This document shows, piece by piece, positions 3,756 through 59,200 of a DNA stretch of 64,000 bases (positions are counted from its first letter, which is position 1; each line of letters begins with the position of its first letter). A program made the translations under genes and the position numbers. Origin of the DNA: Iphione sp. A-MEVVRFRX5 (Eukaryota); assembly GCA_976226885.1 (NCBI GenBank), contig OZ320318.1:41974001-42038000 (forward strand), given 5' to 3'. Under the pieces are notes generated by a model, which saw nothing but the letters and a program-made list of their open reading frames with translations, made no database searches and was not told the origin of the DNA.

Positions 3756-5573
3756 TAAGTAACAAGCATGATACATAAAACAGGAGATATATCTCCCTTT
3801 GATTAAATCAAATACGCATTATGTCGTAACTTGTATATCTTCCTTTATATACATACACATACAGTAGAATACCAAAATAAAGACAGCTGTCTAATCTGAA
3901 CTAAGCTCTCTTATTTCCAGGTCTCTAATTAACAACAGATTTTGCAATAAAACCAGGTGTAGCTGCACTTTAGTGCATATTTACCGTGCATATTTCAACT
4001 TATGTCTGCATTTTGATCTGTCTAGAATGTGACTTTGTACTGTACATTAAATTTTGTTTATTCTTACAAATCTGAAATTTATATCTTGCCAACTATATAC
4101 ATGCATTGATACACATAGTATGAAAGTGCTTAACTTCGAAAGTGGTATTTTATTAAAGCTAATTTGTATGCATGTGTTGTTGCGACATAGTTTCAGTATC
4201 GTAGCATTACCAATCTAGAGGCGTTCTGGGCAGAATTCTTAATTAAGTAGCGATGTTTGATATCATCAAGCTATGTGTACATGCAGGTATATGGCTGGAT
4301 CTAGGATGGAATGTGTCTGTATGTAAGGTTCCTAGAGGACCATTGACATGAGAAACTCACACCATCACCAACTTGTGCCATATTGTCAGAGGACATTAGC
4401 TTTAAAACCTAGTTAATAAAGTCATTATCCCGCCTTAACTGTAACTTTCCTTTCAAAATAGAGACGATATTGGAGTGTTACATGTATAAATATGAAGTGT
4501 TCCCCCCTGTAGAAGCAGATATTTCACGGTGTAAAGTTGCAATGGTGTGGGTTGGCTCTGGTGTGAGTAAGAACCAGTATGAATCATTTTGTTCCTTTCG
4601 GATCATGATTGTTGTACACTTTGACAGGTGGTCCCCAGTCAGGGCTATTGACTATACAGGTATAGTATTACACATGACCAGTATAATTATTCTCGATGGC
4701 CACTGGCTTAAGATTTTGTGACGTACTGATGTGTTAAATTAGGTACGATGCGATAATTGTGCATGGCACTTTATCATAGTTGTGTCCTCGTTACCCCTCC
4801 TATTGGTTTACTTAGGTTGCCCCCGGTTAGGTTTGCGAAGCAAGAACTGTGTATGGGCGACAGTATCTTCGCCATGAGTGCGGAAATCCCGATGTATTGA
4901 TCTTCCTTGTTTGTGTCTATGTGCATAGTTACCTGCGTCGGTGGGCAACAGTTACAATCCATTGCCCTGATGGGCTAATGTCATTATTGTGATACTTTCC
5001 CACTTATGTTCACATCGAATTCCACTATCTTGTGGTATCTGTAATTTCACAGTTTGCTTTAGTATACTCTTTTCATTCTTCCTATTGTTTTGTTATCATG
5101 GAGAACTTTGTCACTTGCTGCAAAAGTGGTAATAAACATACCGGTGGTTCATACCTAATGCTCCGCGATTCTCGGATATAGTTTGGAAGATGTAAAGAAA
5201 CATCTTTCACAAATGTTTCCTCCCCAGGCGCGATTAACCCCGTCCGAGAATACGTGCCTTGACCACCTTGTTTCTGGACCATGGTGGACGTATATAAAAT
5301 ACTGTGGATAAGACATAAACTACCATACTTTCTTAAGTGTAAACAATGAATTAGTCCATCTGTAATCGTAGAGTTTTCTCAATGCGTTCTCCTGTGTATC
5401 ACTGTTGCTCTCTCTTGGAAAGAGGAAAATGCTCACATTGTGGCCATAACACTGTAAAAAGAACAGAACCAGCATTTTGTTGATCACCGGGATGGCTACA
5501 GAGAGTCCTTACAGGTCTTGGCCGGTATCTGATTTTGTCCTTTCGCCATGTACCTTCCTGATGTGGCTCTATT

Positions 5574-6518
5574 CTATGTTGTACTTTCATCAGTCTCGTC
5601 CATACGAATGTAACGGTCATTTTTCGGTTGCGTCTTTTTCATGGCCGGCAATTGCGTGGTGCTCCTGGCAGTATTAGAGGGGTTACTGACTACAGGATGT
5701 CGACCCATTGGCGGTATCCGATGTGGCATATGCTTGACTTGTTCAAGCTTCTGTATCAATGAGCTCACAGCATTCGAACCCTGCTTTAAAGTCTCCGACA
5801 TCTCCCTCTGCGCAGCCCCACTGCCTTTGCCATTCAATACCGGGTCTCCTGAGCCAGCACTTCCAATTGAATCCTTGGAAGTCTTCCTTTGTCTTGAAGT
5901 TGGCTTAGTATTAGTATTAGTTGTTGGCCTGCCTTTCTCCGTCAATGATGTCACTGCATATGCATTGTGATCTAGGTCCCGTGTTTGTTTCGTTACTGAT
6001 GAGTCAACTCCTAAAGTATCATTCGCTAAGCTACTGTCAACGTTACGGCCCTTTCTACGAATTGGTTTGGGTTTTCTACCACACTCAGTCGTATTGTAAT
6101 ATTCAGTTGGACTCATTCCAGTGGGGCTAGTCGGGGAGGAAGCATTTACTAATCCTTCTCCCTCGGGATTGGATGAGAAACTGGAATCATGCTCAGTAGA
6201 CACCGTAGAACACGGGGCACTACATCCTGACACTTTATCACTCAATACATAGCCGTCACTTTCATCCTCTGTCGTGCGATTGCGTTTAGCAGACATATCA
6301 AAATAGGGCGAGGTCCCTGGCGGTGGAACGCAGTGGCGCGGGGTCCTGGACGACGTTTGCCCTTCAAGATCGATCCCTCTCCGGCGATTTCTCTCCTCAT
6401 ACATTGGGGAGTAGGCATCCGCCTGTGGGGGTGGAGCCAGAGGTTGGCGACCGCGATCTTCGCCACCAGGCATGGACTTCTTTTTCTTTTTCTTCTCCCT
6501 CGTTTTAGTTGTTGGTTG
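5574..6518 (-). CDS. Gene A last exon: S/T/P-rich cytoplasmic tail with YSPM, YFDM, YYNT and YIRM motifs
   Basis: It lies in the 349-aa ORF 5574-6623. A phase-0 acceptor ctacttcttccag|CAA at 6518 gives 314 codons to TAG. Confidence 0.8.
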   Translation of the reverse strand, partial: QPTTKTREKKKKKKSMPGGEDRGRQPLAPPPQADAYSPMYEERNRRRGIDLEGQTSSRTPRHCVPPPGTSPYFDMSAKRNRTTEDESDGYVLSDKVSGCSAPCSTVSTEHDSSFSSNPEGEGLVNASSPTSPTGMSPTEYYNTTECGRKPKPIRRKGRNVDSSLANDTLGVDSSVTKQTRDLDHNAYAVTSLTEKGRPTTNTNTKPTSRQRKTSKDSIGSAGSGDPVLNGKGSGAAQREMSETLKQGSNAVSSLIQKLEQVKHMPHRIPPMGRHPVVSNPSNTARSTTQLPAMKKTQPKNDRYIRMDETDESTT

Positions 6519-7066
6519 CTGGAAGAAGTAGGATCTGACGTTTAGTCTGCTTATGCTGTATACAATGATGATAGTATTTACCGTGTAAACTGTTTTAGGA
6601 TAGATTATTCTAAGGGTCAACAATGTCTCTAATGAAACAGAGAGCTATGAAATACGTGGGTTAAGGGTACTAAGAAAAATCAGTTAATGGCTTTGTTTTG
6701 GAGTGGTAAAGTAAGATGCTCTCTGTGAATTAGCGAGGGCTTAATTTGGCTTTACGCTTTGTTGTAAATCTGTCAAAGGTTTATGTAGGAATATAAATTG
6801 ATTCCCATATTGTACTTCACAATATAGTATAAAACAATGGAAACACAGACCCAATACTGAATATATGCTCTCTACTAGATTTAGCTGGATCACATCTTCA
6901 TTATTCATCAGTAAATATACGTTTTTCCAATATCTCAGAGTTGTTTTTCACAAGAATGCATCGTATTGTTCACCCATGTTTCAATGTTTCTCTAATGAGT
7001 AATATTATGGATACAGTCAATGGCGTTTTTTTTAACTATATCGATATATTCCTCATCGTTTCATAC

Positions 7067-7561
7067 CAGATTTCTAAAAGCCAGATGCAAAAGGCTAGAC
7101 ACCGAAATGTTATACTTATCAGTGTTTCTGAGTTGAATATATCCGGGGAAGGTGCCGCTCGTCGATGGAGCAGCTCGTGCAATTCTAGCATCTACGAAAC
7201 GAATTATACTTGCCATTGTTTCAGGGTTAAATAGATCCGGGAATGTAGGGTACGAATATGAAAGGCTGGTGTCATCGGAATCCTCTGCATCGTCTTTCGA
7301 ATGTTCTTCTTCGTCATTCAAATCCAAGGACTTCTTCACTGCGTTTTCTATATCACTTGGGTCCAACACGAACTCTCCGCCTTTCAGACATTCAGTAAGG
7401 TCAAGAGTATTTGGAGGTGGAGAACATTTTGGCGTCTCTGGCGGAACATTCACATAAAATACCTCGTTGATTGTGTCCTCGTGGTGCGGGGGATCGATCC
7501 CCGGAGGCGGGGTCATGTCGAGCTCAACTCTGTAGACCTGGTTGCAATCTTCTCGGTGGTA
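7067..7561 (-). CDS. Gene A cytoplasmic exon (YHREDCNQ...VFYVNV...GYIQL...FRNL), Pro-rich and acidic
   Basis: Acceptor tttaacag|TAC is in frame with ORF 7061-7516; donor CTG|gtatga. The exon is 495 nt, phase 0-0. Confidence 0.75.
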
Positions 7562-8052
7562 CTGTTAAAGTATTAACCATATTTATATATGGATGAACGG
7601 TCCGGATAAATGATAGTGCTGGATAATTGGAAAGGCATACTATTCGATTTTAGCAGAAACAAAAAGCTTCATATAACGTACAGATCGGAATAAAAATTGA
7701 AATGGACAGTATAAAGTAAAGCGTTCTGATTTTCAAACATATAGAGTGGACTATGGGGAGTGGAGTGTATATAGGGAAGAAGAGAGCGTGGACATATAGT
7801 TAAGGATAAAGGATAAGAAAAAGTAGAGAGCGAAGGCATTGGAATGTCAATGAAACAAGGAGACCAAGAGGTACACAGGCAGACACCTAGGGAGTTTTCA
7901 CTGTTTCACAAGGAGTAATTAATTCTAACAATCCCCGATACCGGCATTCAAAAAGACAGAAACCTCGATAAGTTAACAGATATGTTTCAGTCCTTTACGG
8001 ACATCTGGTCGACCGACAGATTTGTAACAGTAAAATTAACAAAGGGACCTAC

Positions 8053-8211
8053 CTGGTTCAGTTCGTCGCGGCTAGGGGGCTGTGAAGGAGGGTTACGATG
8101 CTTGCGCCGTGACCTCCGGAAGCTTACAAGGACAAAGGCGATGGTGGGAAGAAGGACCGTCGCAACAATGAGCACAACAAGTCCCGCAATAGCCCAAGCA
8201 TCATCATCAGG
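8053..8211 (-). CDS. Gene A transmembrane exon (PDDDAWAIAGLVVLIVATVLLPTIAFVLVSFRRSRRKHR...NQ)
   Basis: Acceptor ttgtctcgctttcag and donor CAG|gtaggt; 159 nt, phase 0-0. A ~26-aa hydrophobic stretch is followed by a basic stop-transfer cluster. Confidence 0.8.
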
Positions 8212-9898
8212 CTGAAAGCGAGACAATAAATGAAAACTCAGTTCTGTGGGTGTTTCTGTCCATAGACCTAAAAAATCTCTAGGCAAGAACAAGGATGATT
8301 TTCAATAAGAAAAATGCTTATAAAGTCATGGGTGTTCAAGAGCCGCTAGAGGGACTGTGAGTTTGTGTGTTGTAGGGTTGCGATACAGATGCCCGTTTGT
8401 TTAGGTTGGAGCAAAGAATCATGCGTCTTTTTGCAAATGACGCAAAACCAAACGGTTCTATGCAAACCGACCAAGTCTTCACAACATATCCATACAGTAC
8501 ATCAGGGGCAGGGTGTGTGTGGGTCTCCCCCTACATTAACAAAAGGCCCAGAAGGTTTCTTGTCACCTCTGTTGCCATCCACCTATAACAGAAAACCAAC
8601 AGGATGATTGCTGGATATAATGGAACCAAGGGGATGGTTGGAACATAGAGAGAAACGGGTGGCAGGGGTGGTTTCAATCTAGTATTGTTGTGCTTATCCT
8701 ATATTATTTAAACTGATGTGGTGTTGTTTTCAAACAAATCCTCTAACAAAATATCCGTTAGACAGAACATGAAACACGAACATAGCAGGATGTCTGATGC
8801 AACCACAGAAAGTAGATAAAAACCACAAGCTTCGCTTGTAAACCTATATTGATTACTTCGTTACTATCTCTATGATAATTATAATCAACTCACGTTTTCA
8901 CAAGGATCGGTCTTTTTTTAGATGTCTAATAACATTAAGGTAATAACACTGGAACTGTAAACTCTTTACAGGAGTCTCCCTTCAACTAAAGTAAACGATA
9001 AATTGCAGTGAAAACATTTGAATTCAACTAGAAGACATGTTATTTGCTTTGACTATTTATGGACAAGTCTTGGTGCAGTGAACAGCCCATGTAGGCGTTT
9101 GTATAATAACACTGAGGCTTTGCCCTTCGCTAACCATATATTGTGATAATTATTGTAAAATAAGTTGTACATGTTTACAATTGAAAGAAATATCACTGTC
9201 ATTGCAGCATCACTGTATATTCTTAAAATTTGAAATGATATTACTGAGCAAACTGTATTATCACAGAATGCGTATAGCTCAGACTAGCTGCATAAGCTTT
9301 ATTGCTCATGGACACTGACAGTGTGACGGAGATTTAATTAAAAGGATAAACGTCATAGACTCGGTTCAAAATATACAGTGTTACAAAGGAGAGGGACTCC
9401 TCTCTTTGAGGCTTTGTACTGTTTGGTCCCAATTAATTATTATTTGGCATTGATTTCAGTACTAAATGTGCTATTCAAATGAAGAAATAAGGTCTTAGAG
9501 TTTACATTAGAAAATGCAGACTCCTGGTTATCACTCTTCACCTCTGTAGCAGTTTTGTTGACTTGCTAATTTTAGAGAGAGATCTTGATATTGACACTAA
9601 TTAAGTCATTTATAATAAGAATAAAAGTTAGAATTAAACTAGATGCCGAAGGTCACCTTAGCTGTGTCAGTGCACTACATAATGTTCCAAGCAGGATAAC
9701 CATAGCAGTAGTTTACATTTGAATCAATCTTGTTAGTCCTAAGTGAATCTCCACCTCAAACAGGAAAAACAAATATAGTTCTTGGTAATCTCTAATTTGG
9801 TCACCAAGAAAGAGTGCACCATTTCAAAGAGAGATGGGGCTGCTGATGGTAGAATATCCAACTTTACATGACAATGCGCAACTTCTGATGTACAGGTA

Positions 9899-11250: not shown

Positions 11251-11585
11251 CCCAGCTAACACACAACATTGTGTTGTAGTTTGGTTAGGTTAGAAAAGAT
11301 TCTCGACACAATGTTGTATAAATGTTAGATCATGGCCCTCAGGTAACATTATAATATAATGTGTCTAGAATGTTGTAGTTTGATTAGGTCAGAAAAAGAC
11401 CTTCACACAATGTTGTATAAATGTTAAATCACAACCTTCAGATAATGTTATATAATAACATACTGATCTACAACATTGAAGTTTGGTTAGGTTAGAAAAC
11501 AATTGACAATGTTATACAATAAATTTACCATAACCAAAACACAATGTTACCACAACATTGTGGCATCATTATAGTGTTTGCTGGG
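11251..11585. mobile_element. MITE with CCCAGC termini (CACTA/CMC-like)
   Basis: TIR CCCAGC(T/A)AACAC; 2-bp TSD AT (11249-50, 11586-87); subterminal repeats acaatgttg/caacattg and gtttggttaggttagaaaa. Confidence 0.7.
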
Positions 11586-14310: not shown

Positions 14311-14620
14311 CCTTAGATGTTTCTACACCTCATTATATGTGCTACTCAAGTCCTCAGCTCTCCTCCTGTTGCCCTTAGATATCACCACACTTCTTTAGGT
14401 GTTATTCAAGTCCTGAGCCCTCCTCCCATTGCCGCTAGATGTTTCCACACCTTGTCAGGTGCTACTCAAGTCCTCAAGCCTCCCCCTGTTGTAGTCTTGG
14501 TGTATCAAGTACTCCTTAGGTGCTACCTATGTGCTAACCCTTCCTCCTGTGCCCCCTAGGTATCACCACACTTCTTTAGGCACTACACCTATCCTTGGTC
14601 ACACTCCTAATGCCCTTAGT
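14311..14620. repeat. Degenerate ~60-bp minisatellite (about 4-5 units)
   Basis: Recurring ccttaga...ccacac...ggtgctactcaagtcctc...cctcctgttgc units. Confidence 0.65.
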
Positions 14621-16205: not shown

Positions 16206-17285
16206 CTATAAGGGAGAAGTATATTGGGAATCGAACTGCAGCCAGCAGCACCTGAACCTTTACTCTAATTTTAATCTTGGAAACCTTCCTCCTATAGGTG
16301 CTCAGAGAATGAAATTCCACAGACTAGAACTTTGTTTAAAGTCCAATGTTTCAATGTTTTATTGACCATTCCCTGTTTGATACACAATGATCTCCTTGGG
16401 CAATTGGAACACATAGAGTGCTGGAAACAAGTTGTAAAACAATGTGATTGTGACAACAATGTCAGAGTATATCAATGGCATGTGTTATGTACAGATCGGC
16501 CGCTACTGCGCTAGCCTACAGTCTTGCTTGATGTTGTTGCTTCACATGGAATAAACACTCATTAAAATAGCATTCACGACTTTTTATGACTTTCTCAATG
16601 TGTATGCAAGATACCTCAATGTAGTGCAAGCAGTCTATTCGCCTTAGTGTCCATACTACTGCCAGTACCTCAGTGTCGTCCTGCTAGAGCTTCGCCAGAT
16701 CATAAACGCTAAATTACTTTTTAAGTTTTACTAACAAGTTTGCTTGTCCATAATCAGATGCAAAACCACTCAATGCCTAGTTTAACATGACACTGCATAT
16801 GTTACACTACTTCTCATTGACTCAATTATATGAAACCGCACATCACCAAATTAAAAGCCGTTTCGACGATTGACTGATTTTCACTATAAAAGCTCAGCTA
16901 AGGGATAGAGCTTAACTTTCAAGTAATGACATTACATAATTGCAAGGTTATAGAACTGCAAGTCAAGAAAAGCTACGATGACGCGGGTTATCCCTCTTTC
17001 TCCGACCAATGCCGCAATGTACAGCAATGATTAGTCCTTGTTAGAGAGGACACTGAACACCTTGTTAGTAACTTACACCTAGTGGGTCAGTGTTGATAAC
17101 ACCACCTATGCTGAGCTAGCCAGTTATGAAAGGGTTAGCTAGCCCATCTTGAGATGGTTTGATTGCCAGCATACGAGTTGGGGGATTGTCTCCCCCATCT
17201 GTGCCACTCCTGAGGGCACTTAGTCTTCCTTTCCTCTTCCCATCAACAGAATATCTCTCAACTTGATGTGCTCTGGCAGATTATT

Positions 17286-18026
17286 TCAGAGGTGTGCTGC
17301 ACCATACCTCAAGCTTCTCTTGAATGCCTTGGTTTTTGGGTGATCCACCTTGATTCTCATTGAGTGCCCATCCCGTGTCTTTGTTTCTTTGGCCATGTGC
17401 AAGAGACCCAGCTTCACTTGTCTGTGCACTGCTTCAACTGCCTTTTTCCGAGTGAGCTCGTCAACCTGTTTGATTTGAGTCCAAGCACAGATTGCCTTGA
17501 CTGTCATCTGTGCTCTCGTTTGTAGACACAACCTCGTGCACCTGTTTAGGTGAAACTGTAGGTTGCAGATGATCAACTTGGAGCAGCTGAAGAAAGGTAT
17601 GGCTCCATATTGGAGATGTGGTATGACTAAGGCTTTGAACAGCCTCACACATGCCCCCCATGGCAGTAGTCTTTGACTCTGGAGATCTTAAGATCGGCAT
17701 TCCACATTTTGCTCTTTACATCCTTGAGCACTTCTCGCACACTAAGGTGAGCATCCATTGTGTATATCCCAGTAGTCAAAGCTTGGTGACCATGGACAGA
17801 TCGGCGTCATTCACTTTGATGTCAAGTGGGGTGCCAGCTGCTTTGCCAATAGGCATGTAGCAACATTTCCCTTCTGATGTACTGTCTTTGGTCACGGAAG
17901 TAGCTGTTCATGAATTTACAAACATTTAGGATTGCTCCAGCAGCTTTAAGTCTGCTTAGCACACCCGAGGAGGGCACTAGATTGAATGCCTTCCTCATGT
18001 CGAACGTGAGGAGGCAGCAGTAGCCT
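17286..18026 (-). mobile_element. CR1/L2-type LINE ORF2 3' part (degenerate, internally deleted)
   Basis: RT motif FDMRKAFNLV..SYFRDQRQY and C-terminal LFKALVIPHLQYG. It continues from the 19359-19610 piece across a DNA transposon. Confidence 0.85.
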
Positions 18027-19356
18027 GGGAAGGGTGGGTAATTTGGACCCCCTAAGAAAAACATGCTCTAAAATTAAAATGTGTAAGCCACTGTGCAAAA
18101 ACTTTGCTTATTTTGAAGCAATAGGGGCTGCAGCATATTTTAACAAACTGGGGGAATATTAGTTAGATTAGTCTTTGAGTAAAATGCAATTCAAAATCTT
18201 TTATGACTGGTACAGTTTACCAAATAGGGAGGGTAAATTGGACCAGGTACCATAGTCTGAAGAGTCAGGGGTAAATTGAATCTAGGTCCTAGAATTGTAA
18301 GTTCCATGAACAACAGCATGGCTTTGAAAGGTTTTGGTCACTATTAGTTGTAATGCCAATTGATTTTGTGATTTCTACCATCAAAATATGTACGACAGAA
18401 TGGGACCTGCATTTGTAGGGTATTAGATTCCTTTCATACCTGTTGCTGCAAATTTATAAAGTGTATGTACATGTATATTTAAAATGTTTCACCAAACATT
18501 TTAAAAACTAGAAAAATTCATTTGACATGATAACCTCTCAGGCTTAAAAAGCTCCTTGCACTAGTGACAGGAGCTTTGTTGATGACCTTCTTCAATATGC
18601 GGACAAATTACCACACATCTATACCAATTATCTTGTCATTAAAAGTCCAAAGTATGTTAAAACCAAAAGTAAATAAATAAAAAACCAATAAATGTTTCTC
18701 TATTTATTTTTTTAAATGATGCCTTTCATTTCAATAAAAAATACTTTCAGTAGAAAAGGGTACATATTGGAGTTCCATAAATTTGCACTACATTTACTGT
18801 CTTAGCTCAAAATAGATTGTTTTCATATAATAGCTCCATGTTGAGACCAAATACATATACCACAAGGTTTTCTCCAAAGCCTGCTTAACAGATAAAAGAA
18901 AAGGTAATGGTTGTATAGGTAGATTGGACTGAGTCAGGTAATTTGACCAGTGGTCCAATTTACCCTCCCTATAGTGGTCCAATTTACCCACACACCAATC
19001 CCCATGAAAAATGTTTTCTGCACATTTTTGTGTAGATGACAGAGACTAAACTTGATGTTAGTATTACTTCTGAGTGGGACAATATTGATATAAAGTTATG
19101 ATAGGGGTCTATGTACTTTCTGCTCGCAACTACATTGCCAAATATAATTGGTAAAATTAGATCAGTGAGACGTAAAAAGAATAAATGTGTCTCAGCTTGG
19201 CACATGTTTTTTTGAAGCCATCATTTTTTAGTTCTGAGACATTGTGTAGTTATATCATTTGTTGTTGGATGGTGCTCATATTCCTTCCTTGCTTGAAAAT
19301 CAGAGATCTTGATGTGGTCCAATTTACCCACTGGTCCAAATTACCCACCTTTCCCC
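18027..19356. mobile_element. 1.33-kb non-autonomous TIR DNA transposon (TA target, pogo/Tc1-like), copy 1
   Basis: TIR GGG(G)AA(A)GGGTGGGTAATTTGGACC, TA at 19357-58, and internal ggtccaatttaccc repeats. It aligns throughout with 52903-53903 + 57382-57711. Confidence 0.85.
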
Positions 19357-19358
19357 TA

Positions 19359-19610
19359 CAGTCCGGCATTTGTCAGTTCACTTGCCCTTCCCAGCAATGA
19401 TACCACAGCCATTTCTGTGCTGCACCCCCTTCTGAAACCATGCTGTTTCTCACTAATGACTCTTTGCTTGTCAAGGTGATGCATGATGTCATTAACAAAC
19501 CACTTTTCGAAGATTTTTTCCCAGAAGTTGCAGAAAGGAAACGGGTCAGTAATTCCCAAGGGTATTTTGATTGCCTTGCTTTTATAGCGGCGTTACCCGC
19601 TCCTCCTTCC
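19359..19610 (-). mobile_element. 5' part of the same LINE RT, upstream of the transposon insertion
   Basis: KIFEKWFVNDIMHHLDKQRVISEKQHGFRRGCSTEMAV (RT QHGFR motif) joins GYCCLLTFDMRKAF once the TIR element is removed. Confidence 0.8.
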
Positions 19611-21867
19611 ACGCTTTTCCAAATGGAAATACATACACGGGGTTCACAAAAACGTCATGTTAGGAGCTTCAAAGAATAACGATAAATGTGTAAAGCATAT
19701 AATGAATGATAAGTCTATGAGGGATGGACGCATTGAAACCTTGACTGTTCGAAGAAGAAGAATAATACATGTTCTAAGGGAACTACAAAGAACATTTTTG
19801 TTGCAAAAGAGATTGAGACAATAAACAATATTTTGTATTATTAGACCCGCACACATTATGAAAACACCTAATGCGATAGGGTTTGAAAAAAGCGGTTGCT
19901 TCCTGCATGCTTCCCACACACATGAAGGGATATCACATTTATGGAAACGTTGCTTGATTACATTAAGAGGAGAAGAATTATACACTTTGTTTTCAATAAC
20001 AAGCATACATCACAAGGAAGAACATCAAAACTCACAATCTACATTGTTAATTGCCCCCCCCCGCTTTTGGAACTAAACGCGCTGCATTTACTACTTCTAT
20101 CTTATATTTTCACAGGACATCGCCGATCTATGCACTCCATGTGTCCATGCTGCTTGCATGTGTGGGTGGGTTACGTGCTTCAACGGATTTTCAGTATTAT
20201 GAGAACAAGCTAGGCCTTGCCACTAAGTCTGCAGCATGAATATGGGCTCGTGCTTGCGATGTTCAGAGCAAGCACTGTCCATAAATGTAATGCACGTGGT
20301 TCCGTGATTTTTGAGATCTATTATTACACAAAACAGTATTTCAATGTACCGGTACCTGAACATATTAGCTGCCGCCATTACAAAGTTTTAATTCACTAAG
20401 ATTTTATTATTTATAGATCCTACACTTACACGCTTTATTTCTACATCTTTATTCTATGTCTAGTATCGCCACCAGTTCAGACATTTTCCAATTATACACA
20501 TCCAATCGGGCTCGTAGGATTCATATACAATACTCAAAAACAACCTGAATGCAGGTACTTGCGGGCAGAGTAGGAAGTAAGCTGATAAGAATAAGATGAC
20601 AGGTATAACGAGAGGGTCAAACCAACGAGGAAAGTATGTTAACTCGAGTGGATGTGAAGAGGTTAAGTAATGATTATCTCATATCGGAAGTTATGTAGGT
20701 GTTTGTCTCAGATAATACCTAACTGTATTAGGAGAATGGCTCCTCCTGTGAGAGACTCGCTGTGTAAATTGATGAAAAAACTGGGAATTTCCCAGAGAAC
20801 GTCTGCGAACAGATATATTGTACACTTTATACTGGTGCGTATAATAATTGAGATATAGAAAGTACAGATGAAAATATTAGGGGCCAGAGGGGGGGGGGGC
20901 AGAACGAGAGACAAGTACTCTTCAAGAAAGAAAGATTATGAGATAGGAAAACGGCGAAAGAAGACATTCTCAAGCTTTTTAAGATCTGAAATGAAAAGTA
21001 CATACGAAATGATACGAACAGCGGTTTTAAGTTAACGAAATCGAAGAACTAATGTACTAAAGAAACTCGTTACATAGATGGCCTGTGCTGAGCAGGTCTT
21101 CTCATACTTAGATCGTACGCGTTCTCACTGACCGGCAGAATACTATACACACTAAATGGTTTTGTGTACAGAGGATATTCCAAAACCGCACACTTGAAAT
21201 CCAAATTGGCCGAAATGCGAACGATAATACCAGGAACGAACTATTTTCCTGCATACATAATAGAAAAAGTGCACGAAAAACAAACACGTTTTCATCCTCA
21301 GCGTCTAATGCTGAAGCATCGTTGAGGAAAGAACCCAGGCCTTTGGCCTTGATTTCAGAATAATCAATGAATTAATCTAATCTCATGCCGAAAACAGCTC
21401 GGTATTCGCCCTAGAAAGCAGGAACTGCACTTTATGTGTGATCGGATTTAGGTTTAAGATAACTACAATCCAATTCCTCGAGCCATTTCCTCCCTGAATA
21501 GTCTTATCATTGTCTTTGCCCCCTATGTGCTGTATTTCGCTTTCTCCCTCTCTTACATATAACTTGTTCTTTCTCTGTCCCTGTCTCTGCCGTTCCTCTA
21601 TTTAGATATGCCGCTTTACTTACAGCACCTTCCCCCGCTGATATACATGAATTCTATCTGCCTGTCAATCCCTTTCAGTCTTCCACTTTTCTTTCCTCTT
21701 TAACACTCCCTGCCTCTGCACTCTCTATTGCTTCTACCTTTCTCACTTCCTTCTCTAATACTATCTCCTGCTCTACATATTTCTCTGCTACATGGTACTG
21801 TGGATTTTCCCTTACGTACATTTTGTTCCCTCAGAAGCCAGTGACATAGGCTTATCTCCTAACAGTT

Positions 21868-24216: not shown

Positions 24217-25503
24217 TTAATTAGGAAGGCCCAAGATCACAGAAGCTGGAGGATCATGGCAGCCAATCTTCATGATGAAGACGGCACCCAGTAATGATGA
24301 TGTGACACTGTCTATCACATGATAGATGATATGAAATATCTTCTAGTTTGCTAAAGAAAAGCTGAATTGGGCCGAATTCTCTCCGATCGGTATGGAAAAA
24401 CACAGCTTTAACAGAATTGGGTGGAATTCTTTCTGATTGGTACAAAAAGTGCAGTTTCAACCAATCGGTACCAAAAAATGTAAGTTTTGGGTGCAATTCC
24501 TCCCTCCATGTGCTATGGAAAAAAACCCCATACACATGGAAAGTCGGCCTTAGTCTCCCTCTACGTGATTCTCTCCCATTCCCTCTTCTTTCCCATTTCT
24601 CCTTTTCTGTTTCTTGAATGTTTCTTACTCTTCTCCAGTCTCTCTCTACCCGTCCACCTGTCTCTTTCGTCTCATTTTCTCGTTTGTGTGTCCTATGACC
24701 CTTGCTAATGTTTGTCTGGTCATCTGTCAGGCTTTATCTTTGCCCTCTAAGATGATCTTGCTCTTTCTTCCGCCTTTTCTTTCGCTCTATACGATTCCGT
24801 TGATCGGTTCAGTGTAATGTCGAATTAGAACTGCAGCAATTGTTAGATACGCCTTCCCCATTCGAGGAAAACTATCCCTAAAAATGAATAGCAAGGGCAA
24901 ACATGAAGGTTGTGTGATGGAGAAAAAGAAAGCTCTCATATTTTTAATGTGATGTCCAATACAGGGGACACAACTATAGCATCTGAATGTAACAAATAAA
25001 TACATGGCTATCATCTTGAGCAGATAACTTGATGTAACAGATAACGTGATGTAATGTTCGCTATTAACATAATATCGTAATAGCGTAGAGTCAATTTGAA
25101 ACAATGCAGTCAATTCAAACGTACTTCCGAGCAGAAATATACGGTTCATTATCACAATAACAATTGATTATAGGAAGTCACGTTTGATTGCGCTACTGAA
25201 TCTTGCCCCTATCGCTTGACTCTTGCATTATACACTTGTATATTGACATGTGATAAGCACATGTTCATGGAGATGCTCTGTCACGGTGTGAAAACTCTCA
25301 CTGACCGAGCACCTTAAAGCCAATTAGTCATAGTTTCACGTAAGAGAAAAGAAATATTAAATACAGAACCACATTTGCAATACGAAAATTACAATATAGG
25401 AATACGAGTGAATCATGCAATGGCCTATCTGTCAACGTAAGTTAAGAATATATTGGCACTTTTGATACTTTTTCTCTATTAGAATTTCATGTTGATCTCC
25501 TAC

Positions 25504-25663
25504 CTCGATAGAACTCGTTTCAGTTGTTTCAACTGATGACGTCATGAACAGCGACGTTGTGTCCACTGACGAGACAGCCCCAAGAGGCGTGGAGGTTGTC
25601 TCCGGTATGAAGGACGACTCCATTGTGGCTGTGTTTTCCGTACAAGATCCAAGACAGAATATC
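25504..25663 (-). CDS. Gene A exon 2: end of signal peptide plus S/T-rich mucin-like ectodomain
   Basis: Acceptor gatatttccag (phase 2) and donor GAG|gtagga (phase 0). It encodes IFCLGSCTENTATMESSFIPETTSTPLGAVSSVDTTSLFMTSSVETTETSSIE. Confidence 0.7.
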
Positions 25664-25856
25664 CTGGAAATATCTTCTCTTAGGCAAATGTCTCAAAAGT
25701 CGGTATTAACCAGGTAGAGTGTGTCGATGATTTCAAAGTGAACTCATTATAGGATCGTCGCACCACTGGCGGTTAATTCTTTTCGTTGTATTTCTTCCAT
25801 GCAAGTGCCTTGTCTGTTGACAGCTGGTAACCGTATGCATGGAGATGCTCTGTCAC

Positions 25857-25882
25857 AGCGTTAAAACTCTCATCCTCGCCAT
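25857..25882 (-). CDS. Gene A exon 1 (MARMRVLT-L), start of signal peptide
   Basis: aaaATGGCG start context. The phase-2 donor CT|gtgaca is weak, but it joins exon 2 to give MARMRVLTLIFCLGSCT. Confidence 0.5.
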
Positions 25883-25964
25883 TTTGTCTTTCCGAGAATC
25901 AACGACCTCAATGATGCGCACGTACTTTCACTTCTGATAGCTTTGCAGCCCTGCGCATGCGCAG
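25877..25964 (-). promoter_or_regulatory. Putative gene A promoter: NRF1-type palindrome plus YY1-type motif
   Basis: Perfect palindrome CTGCGCATGCGCAG at 25951-25964 (NRF1 consensus YGCGCAYGCGCR). AAAATGGCG at 25885-25877 overlaps the ATG. Confidence 0.5.
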
Positions 25965-27749: not shown

Positions 27750-28900
27750 TTCAACTTACGTGCAGGTAAAAGATCATTTCGCTGGCAAACAGCCCTACAA
27801 CATTTATAGAATCCCATTTGCTACCCTGTTCTCCTTGACGCACCAAGACCACGTATCAAGGGGGGCATGATAGGTCAGATGTGGTAGAATAAGAGAGTTT
27901 ATTGACTTTATTCTCAGTGGAAGGACACTTCTGACTCGTGCTGACTTGACCGCTGCAGATTTGCCATTTAAATCCGGCCTCACACAGCCTCAATATAGCC
28001 TTAAAGATACCGCTCTTTGTGCGGCTTCCTAAGGCTACGTAACCAAAATAATGCATGGTAAATGCATACCGTTCCCTCATGCAGCCTCACAGACAGCAGC
28101 ACAGGTATAGACATTGGGCTTAAGAGTAAAAGTATAACACCTGCATAAACTATCAATGTATAAGTCGGATTAAATGACCTAGCTGCACCTAGTGTCATGT
28201 ATAAACATTTACTCGGAGTGAGAACAAGGCCAACTGATTTTTGGGCACAACAGACACTGGACTCAAGAATCAATAGATTATACACTTTTAAAACCACCAG
28301 AAGGTCGTCGGCGTATTACACAGTCCCAAATCTGTCAGCATCTCCTTTACAAGTGAACAGATTTAGGCGATTGGCACAATTACTAATTCCTGTGGCACTC
28401 CCTCCTATATGGTGATAGATGAGCTGATATCCCCAAGGCATGCAAATCTTTTAGATAGTTATTGATGAGCTGGACCAGCCTTTCACCTAAGCCTGCGGTT
28501 TCTGTGCTAAGACCTGGACGGAAACCACGCCGACTGCCAGAGAATAATGCACGTCTTTGAAGCTTTATTTATGTCATTATGATACCCCTTTTTTACAATG
28601 GTACAACCCGAGCTACTGTCCAGCCAGGTGGATAAATTTAGATCTCACCAGTACAATCAAAGAGCCAAGCTAAGGAAATCAATTTGAAAAGTAAGAGTGT
28701 GAGAATGTGCATAGGGATATCAGCAATCCCTGAGCATTTACTGTCATCCACCTGAAGGATCAAGTCAAATAAATACACTGGTGTAATAGGATCAATGTTT
28801 AGACTGACTGGTTCTTATCAGTCACAATACACTAATGAGGATGAATATGACTGCACTAGCTTCTGCCCTGTGTCAATAAAAATCAGCATTAATTCCGTTT
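27750..28900 (-). mobile_element. Degenerate CR1/L2-type LINE ORF2
   Basis: Manual minus-strand translation gives YPPGWTVARVVPL*KKG, RGFRPGLSTETA, and YADDLLVVLKV (TACGCCGACGAC near 28310). Confidence 0.75.
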
Positions 28901-35269: not shown

Positions 35270-36050
35270 TAAGGTAATGTTGTTTGGGAAGGCTGGAGGC
35301 TTCCAATTAGATGTGAAATTGGGAAGTGAGATCTTGGAACAAGTGAGCAGTTTTAAGTTCTTAGGTTTGCACCTTGACGAAGGGTTATCTTTTGCCTGTA
35401 TGATACAACATGAAATAAAAAAGCTTCATCAGCTATCCTACTTGATTAGGCGATCAGGATTTTTACTAAATATTGAACTCAGGAAAAGAATATTTGTAGC
35501 ATTCCTCACTCCTCACCTAGACTATGGGTTGTGCTTTTTAACAGGAGCAAATAAGGTGGATTTCAATCGGTTGGAGAATGCATGGTACAGAGCTATTTGA
35601 TGTGGCATTTTGGGCTTATGGGTGGGGAGAGGGGAGATCAAAGAATGATTAGGAAGAAACCATATCAAAGATTGTGATAAGAGGTTGCATTGTTATTTGT
35701 TGAATTTGATTTCTGACCTGTATGCATTAGGTATCTGTTCTGTTAAGGGACAATCAGTGACATGTGTGGGGAGCATGATACAGTTGTATTATGAAAGACC
35801 AGTATTGACTACTTATGCAAATAGTTTTGTAGTTGAGGACATAAAAAGATGGAACAAATTACCCTCAAATATATTGTCATTACCAGTAAAGGGTATTAAG
35901 AAGCATGTTATGCAGATTATCTAGTAAATGTAGTTAAGAGAAAAGGAGAAATGCATGCTTGTTTGGATTGTACAATGGCTGAGTATCATGTTGAAAAAAC
36001 ATCAAGTAGATTGATGACACTTTTGCTCAATAAACATTTTCAAATCAAAT
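35270..36050 (+). mobile_element. 5'-truncated CR1/L2-type LINE 3' end
   Basis: SFKFLGLHLDEGLSF...FVAFLTPHLDYG...KRWNKLP, followed by AATAAA and a caaat tail near 36027-36050. Confidence 0.8.
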
Positions 36051-40699: not shown

Positions 40700-42260
40700 C
40701 ACTAGGGGCCTAAAACTAGTACATCAATACAAGTTGTTTTCTTACATTTTGTCATCAGTCTTTCGCAATTTTTTCGAGAATTCTTTCATTGATTGGCAAA
40801 ACCTTACAGCTGGTGGTAACTGATTCCACCACAGTGCTCCTATAAGAGCGAATTTCTTATAACTCCTTTTTTAGATTTGTAAAGGGCAATTATGCACACC
40901 GTGCCAGACCTTGTTTTTGATTTTGCACTTTGCTCAATTCTGTTTGTAAGGACTAAATAATGCAGCATATGGAAAGTACCTTTCCTTATTCGATCACTGA
41001 GACCGTCTATGTCATTAATTAACAAGGGGTCCTGCTTGTTGCCATACACCTTTTTGCAGATCATCAACCTTGCGCATTTGTAGTAGGTCTTTTGCAATTT
41101 ACTAAGGAATTGTTTTTTTAATAACACACAGTATAGGAGCTACATAATCTATCAATGGATAGATGTACAGATTGAATAAGTTCACTCTCAACTCTTTATG
41201 GATGTAATCCTAGAACTTCCCTGTTATATGCGGTACACCACATTTTACAGATAGTGTTATTTACAGATTCTTTCCAAGTCAGATTCTCATTTATTGTATA
41301 CACTAGTATTTTGAGAGCCTTAGTACCGTTCAGGATATGTCCCTTGCAGCTTACTTCATTAAGGCAGACGTCTTTATTCCGTAATATACAAAAAGTACTT
41401 TCCTCATGACTTAACAATAAACAGCTATCTTCACACCAGCATATGATGTATGCATATATGTTTATGAGATTGTTTAATTCTCCTATAGTATTCCCAGTGA
41501 CAAAAAACATAATATCATCCACATATAAGGTTCTGCTAGAATCGGACGGTATATTTTTACATATGTTGTTGATGCTCATTGCAAACCCAAGAGGGCCTAT
41601 GGTACTGCCTTGTGGTGTTACATTGGGTTGCAGCTTGATTTGTGATTTTGTTCCATTAACATAAACATATTGTTTACGGTGTGTGAAGTAGTCTTTAGTT
41701 AGCAAAATAATATTACTACCTGCTCCTTCTGCCTCAAGTGTTTTGATGATGATCTTCCTGTCTTATAGATCAAACGCTTTAGTAAGATCAAACACAGCTA
41801 CAGCTACAATTTTTCCAAATTTTATACCATTCAGGATGTTTTGTATAATTTGACTAATGGCTACCTTTTTAAATACAGGGACCACTTGTGATTTTTTTCC
41901 AGTCAGCAATGTATCTGCCTTCTGCTAACATATCATTGAAAAGACAGGTAATATCTGTGTTAAGTACAGATAGTGCATCTCTGAGATATCGAGCATTGAG
42001 GCCCTCAATATTTGATGCCTTTATCAGGTTGATGCTACTTACAGTCTTGGCCACCTCCTTCTCAGTGAACGGCACAATCCAAAATTAATATCGTTAGTTT
42101 CACATCTCGATCTGCTCAGCAGTTTTTTCACCATTGATTGTGTTAAGTCTTTAATGGTGGTAGTAAAGTAGCAATTGAATGCATCAGGAACTGCTAATTT
42201 TGGTAGGTCTACATTATTTTCTTGAATGGATGCTATGCCTGAATTCTTATTATACTGTTT
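40700..42260 (-). mobile_element. Degenerate CR1/L2-type LINE ORF2
   Basis: FTEKEVAKTV..KASNIEGL..FNDMLAEGRY, DYFTHRKQYV, TPQGSTIGPLGF, LYVDD. Confidence 0.85.
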
Positions 42261-42724
42261 GAATTAACCATTGTACACTACAATATTCAAAATGAAAGGT
42301 TTTCAGTCATAGTGTCAGTGTACTGCCTTTTCTCAAAAACTTTCAAAATAAATATAGATACGTGACCATGTCCTCAATGGATAGATATTCATACATTTAC
42401 CTAACGATGTAATGAAATGTGACAATTTTAATTCTAACATTGTCATATCTAAGTGACAATGTAACTTAAATGTCATCTGCACGGATTGGCTATGCAAGTC
42501 ACATGACAAAATGGTACAGCATCATTGGCTGGAGAAGGCTTCTGAATGACTGTTTTGAATTTGAATTTGTTTATTGATCAACATCTCCATTGCGGTACAA
42601 ACAGAGCTTTCCAAAAGAGTAAAAAGAAAAAATGACAATATAAGAAACATAATTTAGAGTAAGTAAGACTTAAGACTAAGGAACAAAAGACGAACAACCA
42701 TTGTTGTAAATTAAAATCATCTCT

Positions 42725-49864: not shown

Positions 49865-50021
49865 ATATCATACGCCATAGAAAATAAAGTGTGTATGGTA
49901 TACGACACCATGTATTTGTTACAGGATACAATACATACTAGAAGGTAAGGCACGGTGTATATATATTCTGAATGATAGTATGCTAACTATTACATATACC
50001 CTGCGTGCTTCTCACCCACAG

Positions 50022-50224
50022 GAAAGATCCACACTGACCTTAGCACCTACAACCAGTGGATGAAATCTCCTTATGAAATCATCATCGGTCCTGTACCCCA
50101 GTACTGGGTGGAAGGTGGAGGCACCTTTGAGAAACCTGTGGAAGTAGAGATTCCCCACTGTCTTACACCAGAAAAAGCCAAGGCCATCCGAGTACAATAC
50201 AGTCAGCAAGATGGCTGTTTCAAG
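50022..50224 (+). CDS. Gene B exon 5: ZU5 domain, second half
   Basis: IIIGPV...GGTFEKPVEVEIPHC (ZU5 signature F.KPV...IPHC); cccacag acceptor and AAG|gtaagt donor; phase 1-0. Confidence 0.9.
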
Positions 50225-50448
50225 GTAAGTAAACTCCTAAATATTGATGTAGGGTGTCTTGAAAAATCAAATCTGTACAAAATCTACATACAAAAAAGAA
50301 CTGTGTGTGTTGGGTGACATGGGAAGGAAAGATTATAACTTGAATATCCATCTCAGGGCAGCTCACCTTGACGATCCATAATTGCCCTCTTAGAGGAGTA
50401 ACCCTCACTAATAAGTCATACGGCGGAGCATGATTAATTTTTTTACAG

Positions 50449-58336: not shown

Positions 58337-58542
58337 GTATGTTAGCTAACATGCAATATATTTATGGTCCATGACAGCTTTTTGATAAATGGAAGAAACA
58401 CATAATACTGAACTGTATAGGCAAAGCTTTGCTAAACCCAAAACGAAATGCTGAAAAGACATTATTTATGGCGGTGGCAATCGTTAGATGGCATGCTCTG
58501 ACGTGGTATTCATTTTGTGTATGACATTTTTTACATTTCCAG

Positions 58543-58691
58543 CCCAAACCAATGCTGTCCGAGCTTCTGTCTCTTGAAAATGATGCTCTCAGCAAGGTCA
58601 TCAAAGAAATCTCCAGGGATATTGGTGAAGATTTCAAAAGACTTGGCATTTATCTGGGAATACCGGATCAGGATATAACAGAGATATCAAG
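58543..58691 (+). CDS. Gene B exon 9: Death domain, first half
   Basis: ISRDIGEDFKRLGIYLGIPDQDITEI (DD helices 1-3); ttacatttccag acceptor and AG|gtagag donor; phase 0-2. Confidence 0.85.
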
Positions 58692-59200
58692 GTAGAGAAC
58701 CCATAGATTTAGAGTTTTGAATCACTGGTACAATCTTAATGAATTTCCCATAATTTAATAAAAATTGTTAAGATAGCCGCTATGTAAGAAAGATTACCCG
58801 AGAAAATGGGTATCGTTTCTCCACTATAAGAGGAGGGGAAATACATATTTGAATTAGAAGTATCCATTGTCTACTCTTTGACATGAAGCAAAGTACATGT
58901 ACTTAGATATGCATCTATTCTATACTGTATTCTATACTGGATACTGTTTTCCCCCTGTATGGTGAAAAATGTAACTGTCAGCCATAGAGTGGAGACATAT
59001 TGCAGATGTCCCATCATGTAATATTGATATGCGGATATATTTTTGAAACATGACATATAACGTTTACATTTATAGGTATAATTATAATTGTACATCATAT
59101 TTCTATTTTGTAGCATAGTTTGATTTGCTTGATTTTGATATAGCGTGAAAATGCATATTACTAATATTGCCTCTGACACTAAGCCGATTTGTTCCTATAG

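What the first reader, a model, noticed from the sequence alone, without database searches (positions are those of the whole stretch)
5574..8211. LAT/PAG-like transmembrane adaptor tail: ~500 aa, non-catalytic, dense in SH2 docking motifs
Seen: after the TM helix the spliced tail contains three YxxM (YSPM, YFDM, YIRM), two YxN (YVNV, YYNT), YIQL, an ITIM-shaped VFYVNV, Pro-rich runs (TPPPGIDPP, PLAPPPQ), an acidic patch and a KKKKKK cluster, with no recognisable folded domain. Established: pYxxM binds PI3K p85 and pYxN binds Grb2. Inference: this is an invertebrate signalling scaffold receptor, perhaps in immune cells, and likely unannotated because such proteins diverge fast.
Basis: partly seen in the sequence, partly recalled or inferred. 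Interest (0 to 1): 0.7.

Follow-up and report, generated by a model that had tools for sequence, protein, structure and literature searches.

The report
Orphan membrane protein with disordered tail
The stretch holds the last three exons of a real, single-copy invertebrate gene for a one-pass membrane protein with a roughly 500-residue floppy inner tail that carries tyrosine motifs, but its proposed role as a signalling scaffold could not be tested and no relatives were found.

Summary
On the minus strand, three open frames join in phase 0. They are the TM exon (8211-8053), a middle exon (7561-7067) and the terminal exon (6518-5577, stop 5576-5574).

Together they encode 532 aa: a 26-residue membrane helix with an acidic outside flank and an RRSRRKHR inside flank, then a 501-aa tail. 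Exon GC (47-57%) stands out from intron GC (33-38%), and the terminal open frame is far longer than chance allows.

The tail has no Pfam domain, no PDB relative and no paralog in its 1.18 Gb genome. No homolog turned up in about 1.8 billion representative proteins. However, the window's own retrotransposon finds only 28%-identical hits, so that database evidently lacks close relatives of this animal.

AlphaFold on single sequences gives mostly coil, with one confident helix.

Only YxxM is enriched (3 seen, 0.33 expected, p about 0.003 before correction). YxN and the ITIM shape are at chance level.

The gene is not a LAT or PAG family member: it has no profile match and no CxxC. By motif content it most resembles LAX.

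No RNA runs were listed, so splicing, the 5' exons, expression and motif conservation all remain untested. The scaffold reading is plausible but unproven, and the finding is of modest interest.

The parts
8053..8211 (-). Exon encoding the last 5 extracellular residues (PDDDA), the transmembrane helix and the basic, Pro-rich juxtamembrane segment (53 codons, phase 0 at both ends).
   Evidence: Acceptor tttcag| and donor CAG|GTAGGT read directly from the sequence. GC is 0.57 against 0.38 in the flanks. There is no in-frame ATG upstream within the open frame, so an upstream exon is required.
8119..8196 (-). Transmembrane helix, residues 6-31. The N-side flank is DDD and the C-side flank is RRSRRKHR (8095-8118), which implies an N-out/C-in orientation.
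   Evidence: Kyte-Doolittle 19-residue maximum of 2.98. It is the only segment above 1.6 in the 532 aa. Orientation is inferred from the positive-inside rule.
7562..8052 (-). Intron 1 of the segment (491 nt, GT..AG).
   Evidence: GC 0.375. Splice signals are present at both ends.
7067..7561 (-). Middle exon (165 codons, phase 0-0). It holds TPPPGIDPP, VFYVNV (7445-7462), the acidic Ser-rich patch (7271-7321), FPDLF (7229-7243) and YIQL (7130-7141).
   Evidence: The open frame opens two codons before the acceptor AG and closes one codon after the donor CTG|GTATGA. No Pfam match. No homolog among 1.84 billion representative proteins. AF2 mean pLDDT 35.8. Single copy in the genome. An alternative donor/acceptor pair (GATAA|GTATAA with cgtcag|A) would also keep the frame.
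6519..7066 (-). Intron 2 of the segment (548 nt, GT..AG).
   Evidence: GC 0.334.
5574..6518 (-). Terminal coding exon (314 codons plus stop). It holds KKKKKK (6477-6494), PLAPPPQ, YSPM (6402-6413), YFDM (6294-6305), YYNT (6090-6101), a predicted helix (5730-5816) and YIRM (5601-5612). The C-terminus is DETDESTT.
   Evidence: It lies in a 356-codon open frame, compared with at most 166 in shuffled windows. No Pfam or PDB hit. No homolog. Single copy. AF2 mean pLDDT 50.4, coil except helices at exon residues 38-46 and 234-262; the latter has pLDDT 94-97.
25504..25623 (-). CANDIDATE first coding exon, unverified. It runs from an ATG in a near-consensus Kozak context (gccacaATGg) through 40 codons to a phase-0 donor GAG|GTAGGA. 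It encodes an S/T-rich acidic peptide with no Lys or Arg and no signal peptide. Joined to the TM exon, it would give a type III protein with a 45-residue mucin-like outside part.
   Evidence: It stands out among 22 ATG..GT phase-0 candidates on this strand between 8.2 and 46 kb, with GC 0.52 and the best Kozak context. It is single copy in the genome. A TGCGCATGCGCA palindrome lies at 25963-25952, upstream. There is no RNA evidence, it lies 17 kb from the TM exon, and it could belong to another transcript.

Best explanation
This is the 3' part of a real, single-copy, intron-containing gene of a spiralian (mollusc- or annelid-type) animal.

It encodes a single-pass membrane protein oriented N-out/C-in. 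Its 501-residue cytoplasmic tail has no enzymatic or other folded domain and is largely intrinsically disordered.

Such a tail can only act through short linear motifs. The protein is therefore most likely a membrane-anchored docking platform.

The leading specific mechanism is the following. Cytoplasmic tyrosine kinases phosphorylate some of the 15 tail tyrosines. The three YxxM sites then recruit a PI3K p85-type SH2 protein, and YVNV recruits a Grb2/Drk-type SH2 protein. The Pro-rich runs could bind SH3 or WW partners.

What is shown: the exons, the TM helix, the charge asymmetry, the lack of domains, the motif content and the single-copy status.

What is inferred: co-splicing, disorder, topology and all binding and phosphorylation steps.

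The extracellular part is unresolved. No folded ectodomain is visible in the 56 kb upstream, so it is probably short or mucin-like.

My odds: gene model about 0.85; N-out/C-in single-pass topology about 0.8; motif-based docking platform in general about 0.55; phosphotyrosine/SH2 scaffold specifically about 0.3.
For: Gene model:
- Three same-strand open frames with canonical, phase-0-compatible splice signals.
- Exon/intron GC contrast of 0.47-0.57 against 0.33-0.38.
- A 356-codon open frame against at most 166 in shuffles.
- Single copy in 1.18 Gb, so it is not a transposon.
- No Pfam domain on the opposite strand.

Topology: one hydrophobic segment, with DDD before it and RRSRRKHR after it.

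No domain, and likely disorder:
- Pfam finds nothing at E<=1 on either tail exon.
- PDB sequence searches are blank.
- AF2 gives pLDDT 35.8 and 50.4, with coil nearly throughout.
- 72% of tail residues are disorder-promoting.

Motifs:
- YxxM, 3 seen against 0.33 expected, p=0.003.
- YVNV is identical to the Gads/Grb2 motif of LAT and LAX, and LAX also has YxxM (PMC3342071).
- The genome encodes many SH2 domains, with at least 37 exon-level matches.

No folded ectodomain:
- Pfam on 180 minus-strand open frames of at least 50 aa between 8.3 and 63.7 kb (seven frames left out, among them the open frames of the 54.7-57.4 kb retrotransposon) gave only a reverse-transcriptase match and sub-threshold weak hits (E 0.0025-0.0081: RHSP, Zn_ribbon_RanBP, MS_channel_2nd).
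- There is no excess of Cys-rich frames over the other strand.
Against: - No RNA evidence: no RNA run was listed. The junctions, the 5' exons and expression itself are unverified.
- No ortholog or paralog was found, so conservation of the tyrosines, which is the key test, could not be done.
- The YxxM enrichment is the only one above chance. It rests on 3 sites and would not survive correction over all residue and position combinations.
- YxN, the ITIM shape and YxxPhi are at chance level.
- The same tyrosines fit YxxPhi endocytic signals. The tail also has an FxDxF and an acidic Ser cluster, which point towards trafficking rather than signalling.
- Low pLDDT from single-sequence AF2 is expected for any orphan protein, so it is not proof of disorder.
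Confidence: 0.4

Rival explanations
1. This is the cytoplasmic tail of a larger receptor or adhesion protein. The ectodomain exons would lie beyond the window or in small exons that went undetected. The tail would then be the divergent intracellular part of an otherwise recognisable family.
For: The TM exon begins only 5 residues before the helix and has no in-frame ATG, so upstream coding exons must exist. Introns upstream carry retrotransposon fragments and could be very long. Exons under 50 codons were not scanned by Pfam.
Against: Pfam found no significant domain match other than reverse transcriptase in the 180 minus-strand open frames of at least 50 aa that were scanned across the 56 kb upstream. 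Cys-rich frames are no commoner than on the other strand, 17 against 16. A plus-strand ZU5/death-domain gene occupies at least 50-59.6 kb, which limits the room available upstream.
Confidence: 0.25
2. This is a trafficking or sorting membrane protein, or a small mucin-like surface protein. Its tyrosines would serve as YxxPhi endocytic signals for AP-2, working with an FxDxF and a CK2-type acidic cluster, rather than as phosphotyrosine docking sites.
For: Six of the 15 tyrosines fit YxxPhi. FPDLF fits FxDxF. The acidic Ser/Thr patch at residues 134-150 resembles acidic-cluster sorting signals (motif meanings from general knowledge). The candidate first exon is S/T-rich and mucin-like.
Against: The YxxPhi count is not above chance given the composition: about 2.6 expected from 17% L/I/M/F/V, against 6 seen when F is included. 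The excess is specifically Met at +3, which AP-2 does not prefer over Leu, Ile or Phe. A 500-aa tail is long for a pure sorting signal.
Confidence: 0.2
3. This is not one functional gene. The frames would belong to separate transcripts or to a decaying or young, lineage-specific locus with no selected function, and the motifs would be chance.
For: No homolog was found anywhere. No RNA run was listed. Most motif counts are at chance level.
Against: An intact 314-codon exon with no stop, tight agreement between open-frame ends and splice signals, phase compatibility of all junctions and a strong exon/intron GC contrast are not expected of decaying or non-coding DNA. The homology blank is uninformative because the database lacks close relatives of this genome.
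Confidence: 0.12

Closest known systems
LAX (LAX1), a non-raft vertebrate transmembrane adaptor protein (TRAP)
   Same: It has a single TM helix followed by a long tail of about 370 aa with no enzymatic activity. It lacks the juxtamembrane CxxC. It carries a YVNV motif and a p85-type YxxM among about 10 tyrosines (PMC3342071). LAX was itself found by a motif-based genome search.
   Different: There is no sequence similarity: Pfam-wide scans are blank. LAX has five YxN motifs, whereas this tail has two, which is chance level. The short ectodomain is not shown here. This tail is longer, at 501 aa, and has three YxxM. LAX is known only from vertebrate immune cells, and phosphorylation and partner binding are untested here.
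LAT / PAG (Cbp) / NTAL, raft-associated TRAPs
   Same: The same general plan: a TM helix near the N-terminus, a domain-free tail with tyrosine motifs, and Pro-rich stretches as in PAG.
   Different: The LAT (PF15234) and PAG (PF15347) profiles match nothing in the locus or the genome. The CxxC palmitoylation motif is absent. There is no Csk-type site context that could be tested.
MUC1-type transmembrane mucin cytoplasmic tail
   Same: If the S/T-rich candidate first exon belongs to the gene, the plan would be a mucin-like outside part, one TM helix, and a tail with PI3K-type (YxxM) and Grb2-type (YxN) tyrosine motifs. The MUC1 comparison is from general knowledge.
   Different: No SEA domain or tandem-repeat mucin domain was found. 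The ectodomain would be only about 45 aa. The tail here is seven times longer. There is no sequence similarity.
Draper / MEGF10 / PEAR1 receptors (invertebrate and vertebrate TM proteins with tyrosine-motif tails)
   Same: These are single-pass proteins whose disordered tails signal through phosphotyrosine motifs. PEAR1 uses YxxM for PI3K (general knowledge).
   Different: No EMI or EGF-repeat exons were found. The tail has no NPxY and no ITAM.

Membership tests
TRAP class (functional class as defined in PMC3342071) | Single transmembrane domain | tested here: met
   There is one hydrophobic segment, residues 6-31, with a Kyte-Doolittle maximum of 2.98.
TRAP class (functional class as defined in PMC3342071) | Short extracellular domain of a few residues and no ligand-binding fold | tested here: inconclusive
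   The 5' exons are not defined because no RNA is available. No folded domain was found in the minus-strand frames of at least 50 aa scanned for 56 kb upstream. A candidate exon 1 would give 45 aa outside the membrane.
TRAP class (functional class as defined in PMC3342071) | Cytoplasmic tail without enzymatic activity that carries several tyrosine-based motifs | tested here: met
   No Pfam domain. The tail has 15 Tyr, 3 YxxM, 2 YxN and YVNV. Only YxxM is above chance.
TRAP class (functional class as defined in PMC3342071) | Tyrosines phosphorylated by Src or Syk family kinases and bound by SH2 proteins | not testable with these tools
   This needs phosphoproteomics or pull-downs. The genome does encode SH2 domains.
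LAT / NTAL / PAG / LIME (raft TRAPs) | Juxtamembrane CxxC palmitoylation motif | tested here: not met
   There is no CxxC anywhere in the 532 aa. The first Cys after the helix is 28 residues away.
LAT (Pfam PF15234) and PAG (Pfam PF15347) homologous families | Sequence match to the family profile | tested here: not met
   A Pfam-A scan at E<=1 gave no LAT or PAG hit on any of the three exons. Neither profile matches anywhere in the genome.
Draper / MEGF10 / PEAR1 | EMI and EGF-repeat ectodomain, plus NPxY or ITAM in the tail | tested here: not met
   No EGF or EMI Pfam hits upstream. No excess of Cys-rich frames. No NPxY or ITAM.

The most novel reading that the evidence does not exclude
A spiralian animal has its own transmembrane adaptor. 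It would be unrelated in sequence to the vertebrate TRAPs but built the same way: a type III protein with a short acidic O-glycosylated outside part, no palmitoylation motif, and a long disordered tail with YxxM and YVNV. It would couple tyrosine kinases to PI3K and Grb2/Ras at the membrane. This would be a convergent LAX-like adaptor outside vertebrates, where this class has so far been described only in vertebrate immune cells.
Probability: 0.15. Interest if true: 0.6.

Novelty: new member of a known kind. Interest (0 to 1): 0.3.

Why it matters
Membrane-anchored, domain-free adaptors organise tyrosine-kinase signalling in vertebrate immune cells. They are invisible to homology searches because only short motifs are conserved.

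A working analogue in a mollusc- or annelid-type animal would show that this design arose more than once. It would also give a handle on PI3K/Grb2 recruitment in invertebrate cells.

As it stands, the locus is one more unannotated, taxonomically restricted membrane-protein gene with a disordered tail. It is useful for annotation, but no functional claim can yet be made.

Tried and rejected
RNA support:
- The look-up of sequencing runs (kind rna) on 5400-8400 listed no run. Read laying could therefore not be used, and splicing is unverified.

Homology searches, all blank:
- Word-indexed search with the terminal exon: candidates of about 175-550 aa, then about 196-623 aa using the longer open frame with region scoring.
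- Exhaustive phmmer of the middle exon against 1.84 billion representatives.
- JGI metagenome contigs with both exons.
- PDB sequences.
- ESM Atlas by features: best score 0.85, phage hypotheticals, noise.

Control for those blanks:
- The window's intact retrotransposon RT finds nothing closer than 28% identity. The blanks therefore say little about close relatives.

Paralogs: none in the window's own genome.

Structure:
- Single-sequence AF2 of both tail exons gave low confidence. I did not run fold search, because such models give meaningless matches.

Ectodomain hunt:
- Pfam on 180 minus-strand open frames of at least 50 aa between 8.3 and 63.7 kb (seven frames left out, among them the open frames of the 54.7-57.4 kb retrotransposon) found only a reverse-transcriptase match and weak sub-threshold hits, the latter including a RanBP-type zinc ribbon at E 0.0025.
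- The Cys-rich frame screen was equal on both strands.

- A crude splice-site PWM scan for phase-0 symmetric exons gave 6 candidates on the minus strand and 8 on the plus-strand control. It gives no statistical support.
- The PWM also scores this gene's own acceptors poorly, so the scan has little power.

Opposite-strand gene under the exons: rejected, with no Pfam hit on six plus-strand ORFs.

Complex prediction of an SH2 domain with tail peptides was not run.

Full report
**What is there**

The finding lies on the minus strand of a eukaryotic window (39% GC, no N). Earlier follow-ups on the same genome call the animal mollusc- or annelid-type.

Reading the sequence and checking by script gives three exons with canonical splice signals:
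- The TM exon, 8211..8053: 53 codons, acceptor tttcag|CCT, donor CAG|GTAGGT.
- A middle exon, 7561..7067: 165 codons, acceptor ttaacag|TAC, donor CTG|GTATGA.
- A terminal exon, 6518..5577: 314 codons, acceptor cttccag|CAA, followed by the stop at 5576..5574.

All junctions are phase 0.

A second donor/acceptor pair for the last junction (GATAA|GTATAA with cgtcag|A) would also keep the frame. The tail reading therefore does not depend on which of the two is used.

**Is it more than chance?**

Yes, on several counts:
- The terminal exon sits in a 356-codon open frame. Twenty shuffles of the window never exceeded 166 codons. The only frame in the window that is longer belongs to an intact retrotransposon (480 codons); a second retrotransposon frame (336 codons) is slightly shorter.
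- Exon GC is 0.57, 0.47 and 0.49, against 0.375 and 0.334 in the two introns and about 0.38-0.41 in the flanks. A sliding GC profile picks the three exons out.
- The middle exon's open frame opens two codons before its acceptor and closes one codon after its donor.
- Both tail exons are single copy in the 1.18 Gb assembly, so this is not a repeat.
- The plus-strand ORFs under the exons have no Pfam match.

**The protein segment**

The three exons give 532 aa.

There is one hydrophobic stretch, residues 6-31. Its Kyte-Doolittle 19-residue maximum is 2.98, and nothing else exceeds 0.62. It is preceded by PDDDA and followed by RRSRRKHR. By the positive-inside rule the N-terminus is outside and the 501-residue remainder is cytoplasmic.

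- TPPPGIDPP (70-78) and VFYVNV (87-92).
- An acidic Ser-rich patch (134-150).
- YIQL (194) and KKKKKK (227-232).
- PLAPPPQ (244-250).
- YSPM (254), YFDM (290), YYNT (358) and YIRM (521).

I also note an FxDxF (FPDLF, 160-164). The tail has no CxxC, NPxY, PPxY, ITAM or dileucine motif.

**Fold and disorder**

- Pfam-A at E<=1 finds nothing on the two tail exons. On the TM exon it finds only TM-driven sub-threshold noise.
- PDB sequence searches are blank.
- Single-sequence AlphaFold2 gives mean pLDDT 35.8 for the middle exon.
- For the terminal exon it gives 50.4. That exon is coil apart from a short helix over YSPM-flanking residues and one confident helix, exon residues 234-262 with pLDDT 94-97. 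This corresponds to protein residues about 452-480 and nucleotides 5730-5816.
- 72% of tail residues are disorder-promoting.

This fits a largely disordered tail with one helical element. Low confidence from a single sequence is not proof, however.

**Motif statistics**

The tail has 15 tyrosines (3.0%). Counts against 20,000 composition-preserving shuffles:

| Motif | Seen | Expected | p |
|---|---|---|---|
| YxxM | 3 | 0.33 | 0.003 |
| YxN | 2 | 0.78 | 0.18 |
| Yxx[LIV] | 2 | 1.9 | not enriched |
| ITIM shape | 1 | 0.46 | 0.38 |

Only Met at +3 is enriched. If one restricts the test to the handful of classical SH2 classes, this stays nominally significant at about 0.02. If one allows any residue at any nearby position, an enrichment of this size is expected by chance in a fair fraction of tails. 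'Dense in SH2 docking motifs' is therefore an overstatement, although the YxxM triplet is suggestive.

**Relatives**

None were found:
- The terminal exon found nothing in the word-indexed search of 5.8 billion clusters. The length windows were about 175-550 aa and about 196-623 aa.
- The middle exon found nothing in an exhaustive phmmer of 1.84 billion representatives, which has no length filter.
- Neither exon found anything in JGI metagenome contigs.
- The ESM Atlas feature search gave noise.

As a control, I searched the intact reverse transcriptase of the window's own retrotransposon. Its best hit is only 28% identical. The collection therefore evidently holds neither this species nor a close relative. 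For a fast-evolving disordered tail the blanks are expected either way, and 'orphan' cannot be claimed.

**RNA**

No RNA run was listed for the locus. No reads could therefore be laid on it. Co-splicing, expression and the 5' end remain inferred.

**The missing N-terminus**

The TM exon has no in-frame ATG in its upstream open frame, so at least one upstream coding exon exists.

I scanned 180 minus-strand open frames of at least 50 aa between 8.3 and 63.7 kb with Pfam, leaving out seven, among them the open frames of the intact retrotransposon at 54.7-57.4 kb. Only a reverse-transcriptase match and weak sub-threshold hits, among them a RanBP-type zinc ribbon, appeared. Cys-rich frames are equally common on both strands, 17 against 16.

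A plus-strand gene limits the room for an ectodomain:
- Its death domain is split over 58525-58692 and 59139-59561 (Pfam Death, E 8e-7).
- It has a weak ZU5 hit at about 50 kb.
- It therefore occupies at least 50-59.6 kb.

The outside part is thus probably short or low-complexity. The best candidate first exon is 25623..25504:
- The ATG sits in gccacaATGg.
- It has 40 codons, more than half Ser/Thr, six acidic residues, no Lys or Arg, and no signal peptide.
- It ends in a phase-0 donor GAG|GTAGGA.
- Its GC is 0.52, it is single copy, and a TGCGCATGCGCA palindrome lies about 330 nt upstream.

Joined to the TM exon, it would give a type III protein with a 45-residue acidic, mucin-like outside segment. 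This is a model only. The exon lies 17 kb away and may belong to another transcript.

In a crude splice-site scan such candidates were no commoner on the minus strand than on the plus strand, 6 against 8. That scan has little power, because the PWM scores this gene's own acceptors poorly.

**How it most likely works**

A 500-residue domain-free tail on a single-pass protein can only act through short linear motifs. I therefore commit to a membrane-anchored docking platform (about 0.55).

The most specific mechanism consistent with the one enriched motif is phosphotyrosine-dependent recruitment. A p85-type PI3K subunit would bind the three YxxM sites. A Grb2/Drk-type adaptor would bind YVNV. 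The Pro-rich runs would serve SH3 or WW partners (about 0.3). The genome has the needed SH2 repertoire.

Rivals:
- The tail of a larger receptor whose ectodomain went unseen (0.25).
- A trafficking or mucin-like protein whose tyrosines are YxxPhi endocytic signals, helped by FxDxF and the acidic cluster (0.2).
- A non-functional or mis-joined locus (0.12).

**Comparison with known systems**

Vertebrate transmembrane adaptor proteins are defined by three features: a very short outside part, one TM helix, and an enzymatically inactive tail with tyrosine motifs. They are a functional class without mutual sequence homology. LAT, NTAL and PAG carry a juxtamembrane CxxC. LAX lacks it, and it has YVNV plus a p85-type YxxM (PMC3342071).

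On that basis the closest analogue is LAX, not LAT or PAG.

Membership tests gave the following:
- Single TM: met.
- Domain-free tyrosine-motif tail: met.
- CxxC: not met.
- LAT and PAG profiles: no match in the locus or the whole genome.
- Short ectodomain: inconclusive.
- Phosphorylation and SH2 binding: not testable.

It is also not a Draper/MEGF10-type receptor: there are no EGF exons and no NPxY or ITAM.

A full-text search did not rank any paper that pairs transmembrane adaptors or YxxM with molluscs or annelids. That is weak evidence that no such protein has been described there.

**Verdict**

This is a real, apparently unannotated, lineage-restricted membrane-protein gene of a common architectural kind. 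Interest is modest (0.3). It would rise to about 0.6 if RNA, motif conservation and phospho-dependent SH2 binding showed it to be a convergent invertebrate adaptor.

Noticed in passing
window 49979-50314, 58525-58692 and 59139-59561 (+): A plus-strand gene ends here with a death domain split by an intron. The C-terminal half matches Pfam Death at E 8.2e-7, and the N-terminal half was recognised by eye. There is a weak ZU5 hit about 9 kb upstream (E 0.039). This suggests a ZU5/death-domain protein of the UNC5, ankyrin or PIDD type.
   Followed up: partly
window 54685-57401 (-): A non-LTR retrotransposon that looks intact, with consecutive ORFs of 92, 331 and 465 aa, the last carrying the RT. 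Its RT finds nothing closer than 28% identity in the 5.8-billion-cluster protein collection. This shows that the collection lacks close relatives of this genome.
   Followed up: partly
window 17119-19654, 28004-28568, 41199-42263 (-) and 35277-35600 (+): Decayed reverse-transcriptase fragments lie in what would be the upstream introns or intergenic DNA of the finding's gene. One matches RVT_1 at E 1.6e-9.
   Followed up: partly
window 25952-25963 (-) and 25504-25623 (-): A TGCGCATGCGCA palindrome, the form of an NRF1-type promoter site, lies about 330 nt upstream of an ATG in a near-perfect Kozak context. That ATG opens a 40-codon S/T-rich frame free of Lys and Arg, ending at a phase-0 donor. 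The region is single copy. It is a possible first exon of the finding's gene or of another transcript.
   Followed up: partly
I could see plausible ones, such as 13560-13534 and 14880-14824. However, a crude splice-site scan found no more such candidates on this strand than on the opposite strand, 6 against 8.
   Followed up: partly
window 14339-14491 and 11272-11513: Two short tandem arrays: period 60 with 2.5 copies at 75% match, and period 99 with about 2.4 copies. The first lies inside the proposed micro-exon region and explains its GC island.
   Followed up: no
window 58365-58649 (-): An open frame with a RanBP2-type zinc-ribbon-like CxxC...CxxC stretch (Pfam E 0.0025, below the cut-off), antisense to the death-domain gene's intron. 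It may be chance or a gene fragment.
   Followed up: no
window 25235-25300 vs 25809-25872 (-): A local 64-nt duplicate at 80% identity flanks the candidate first exon. Its origin is unknown.
   Followed up: no
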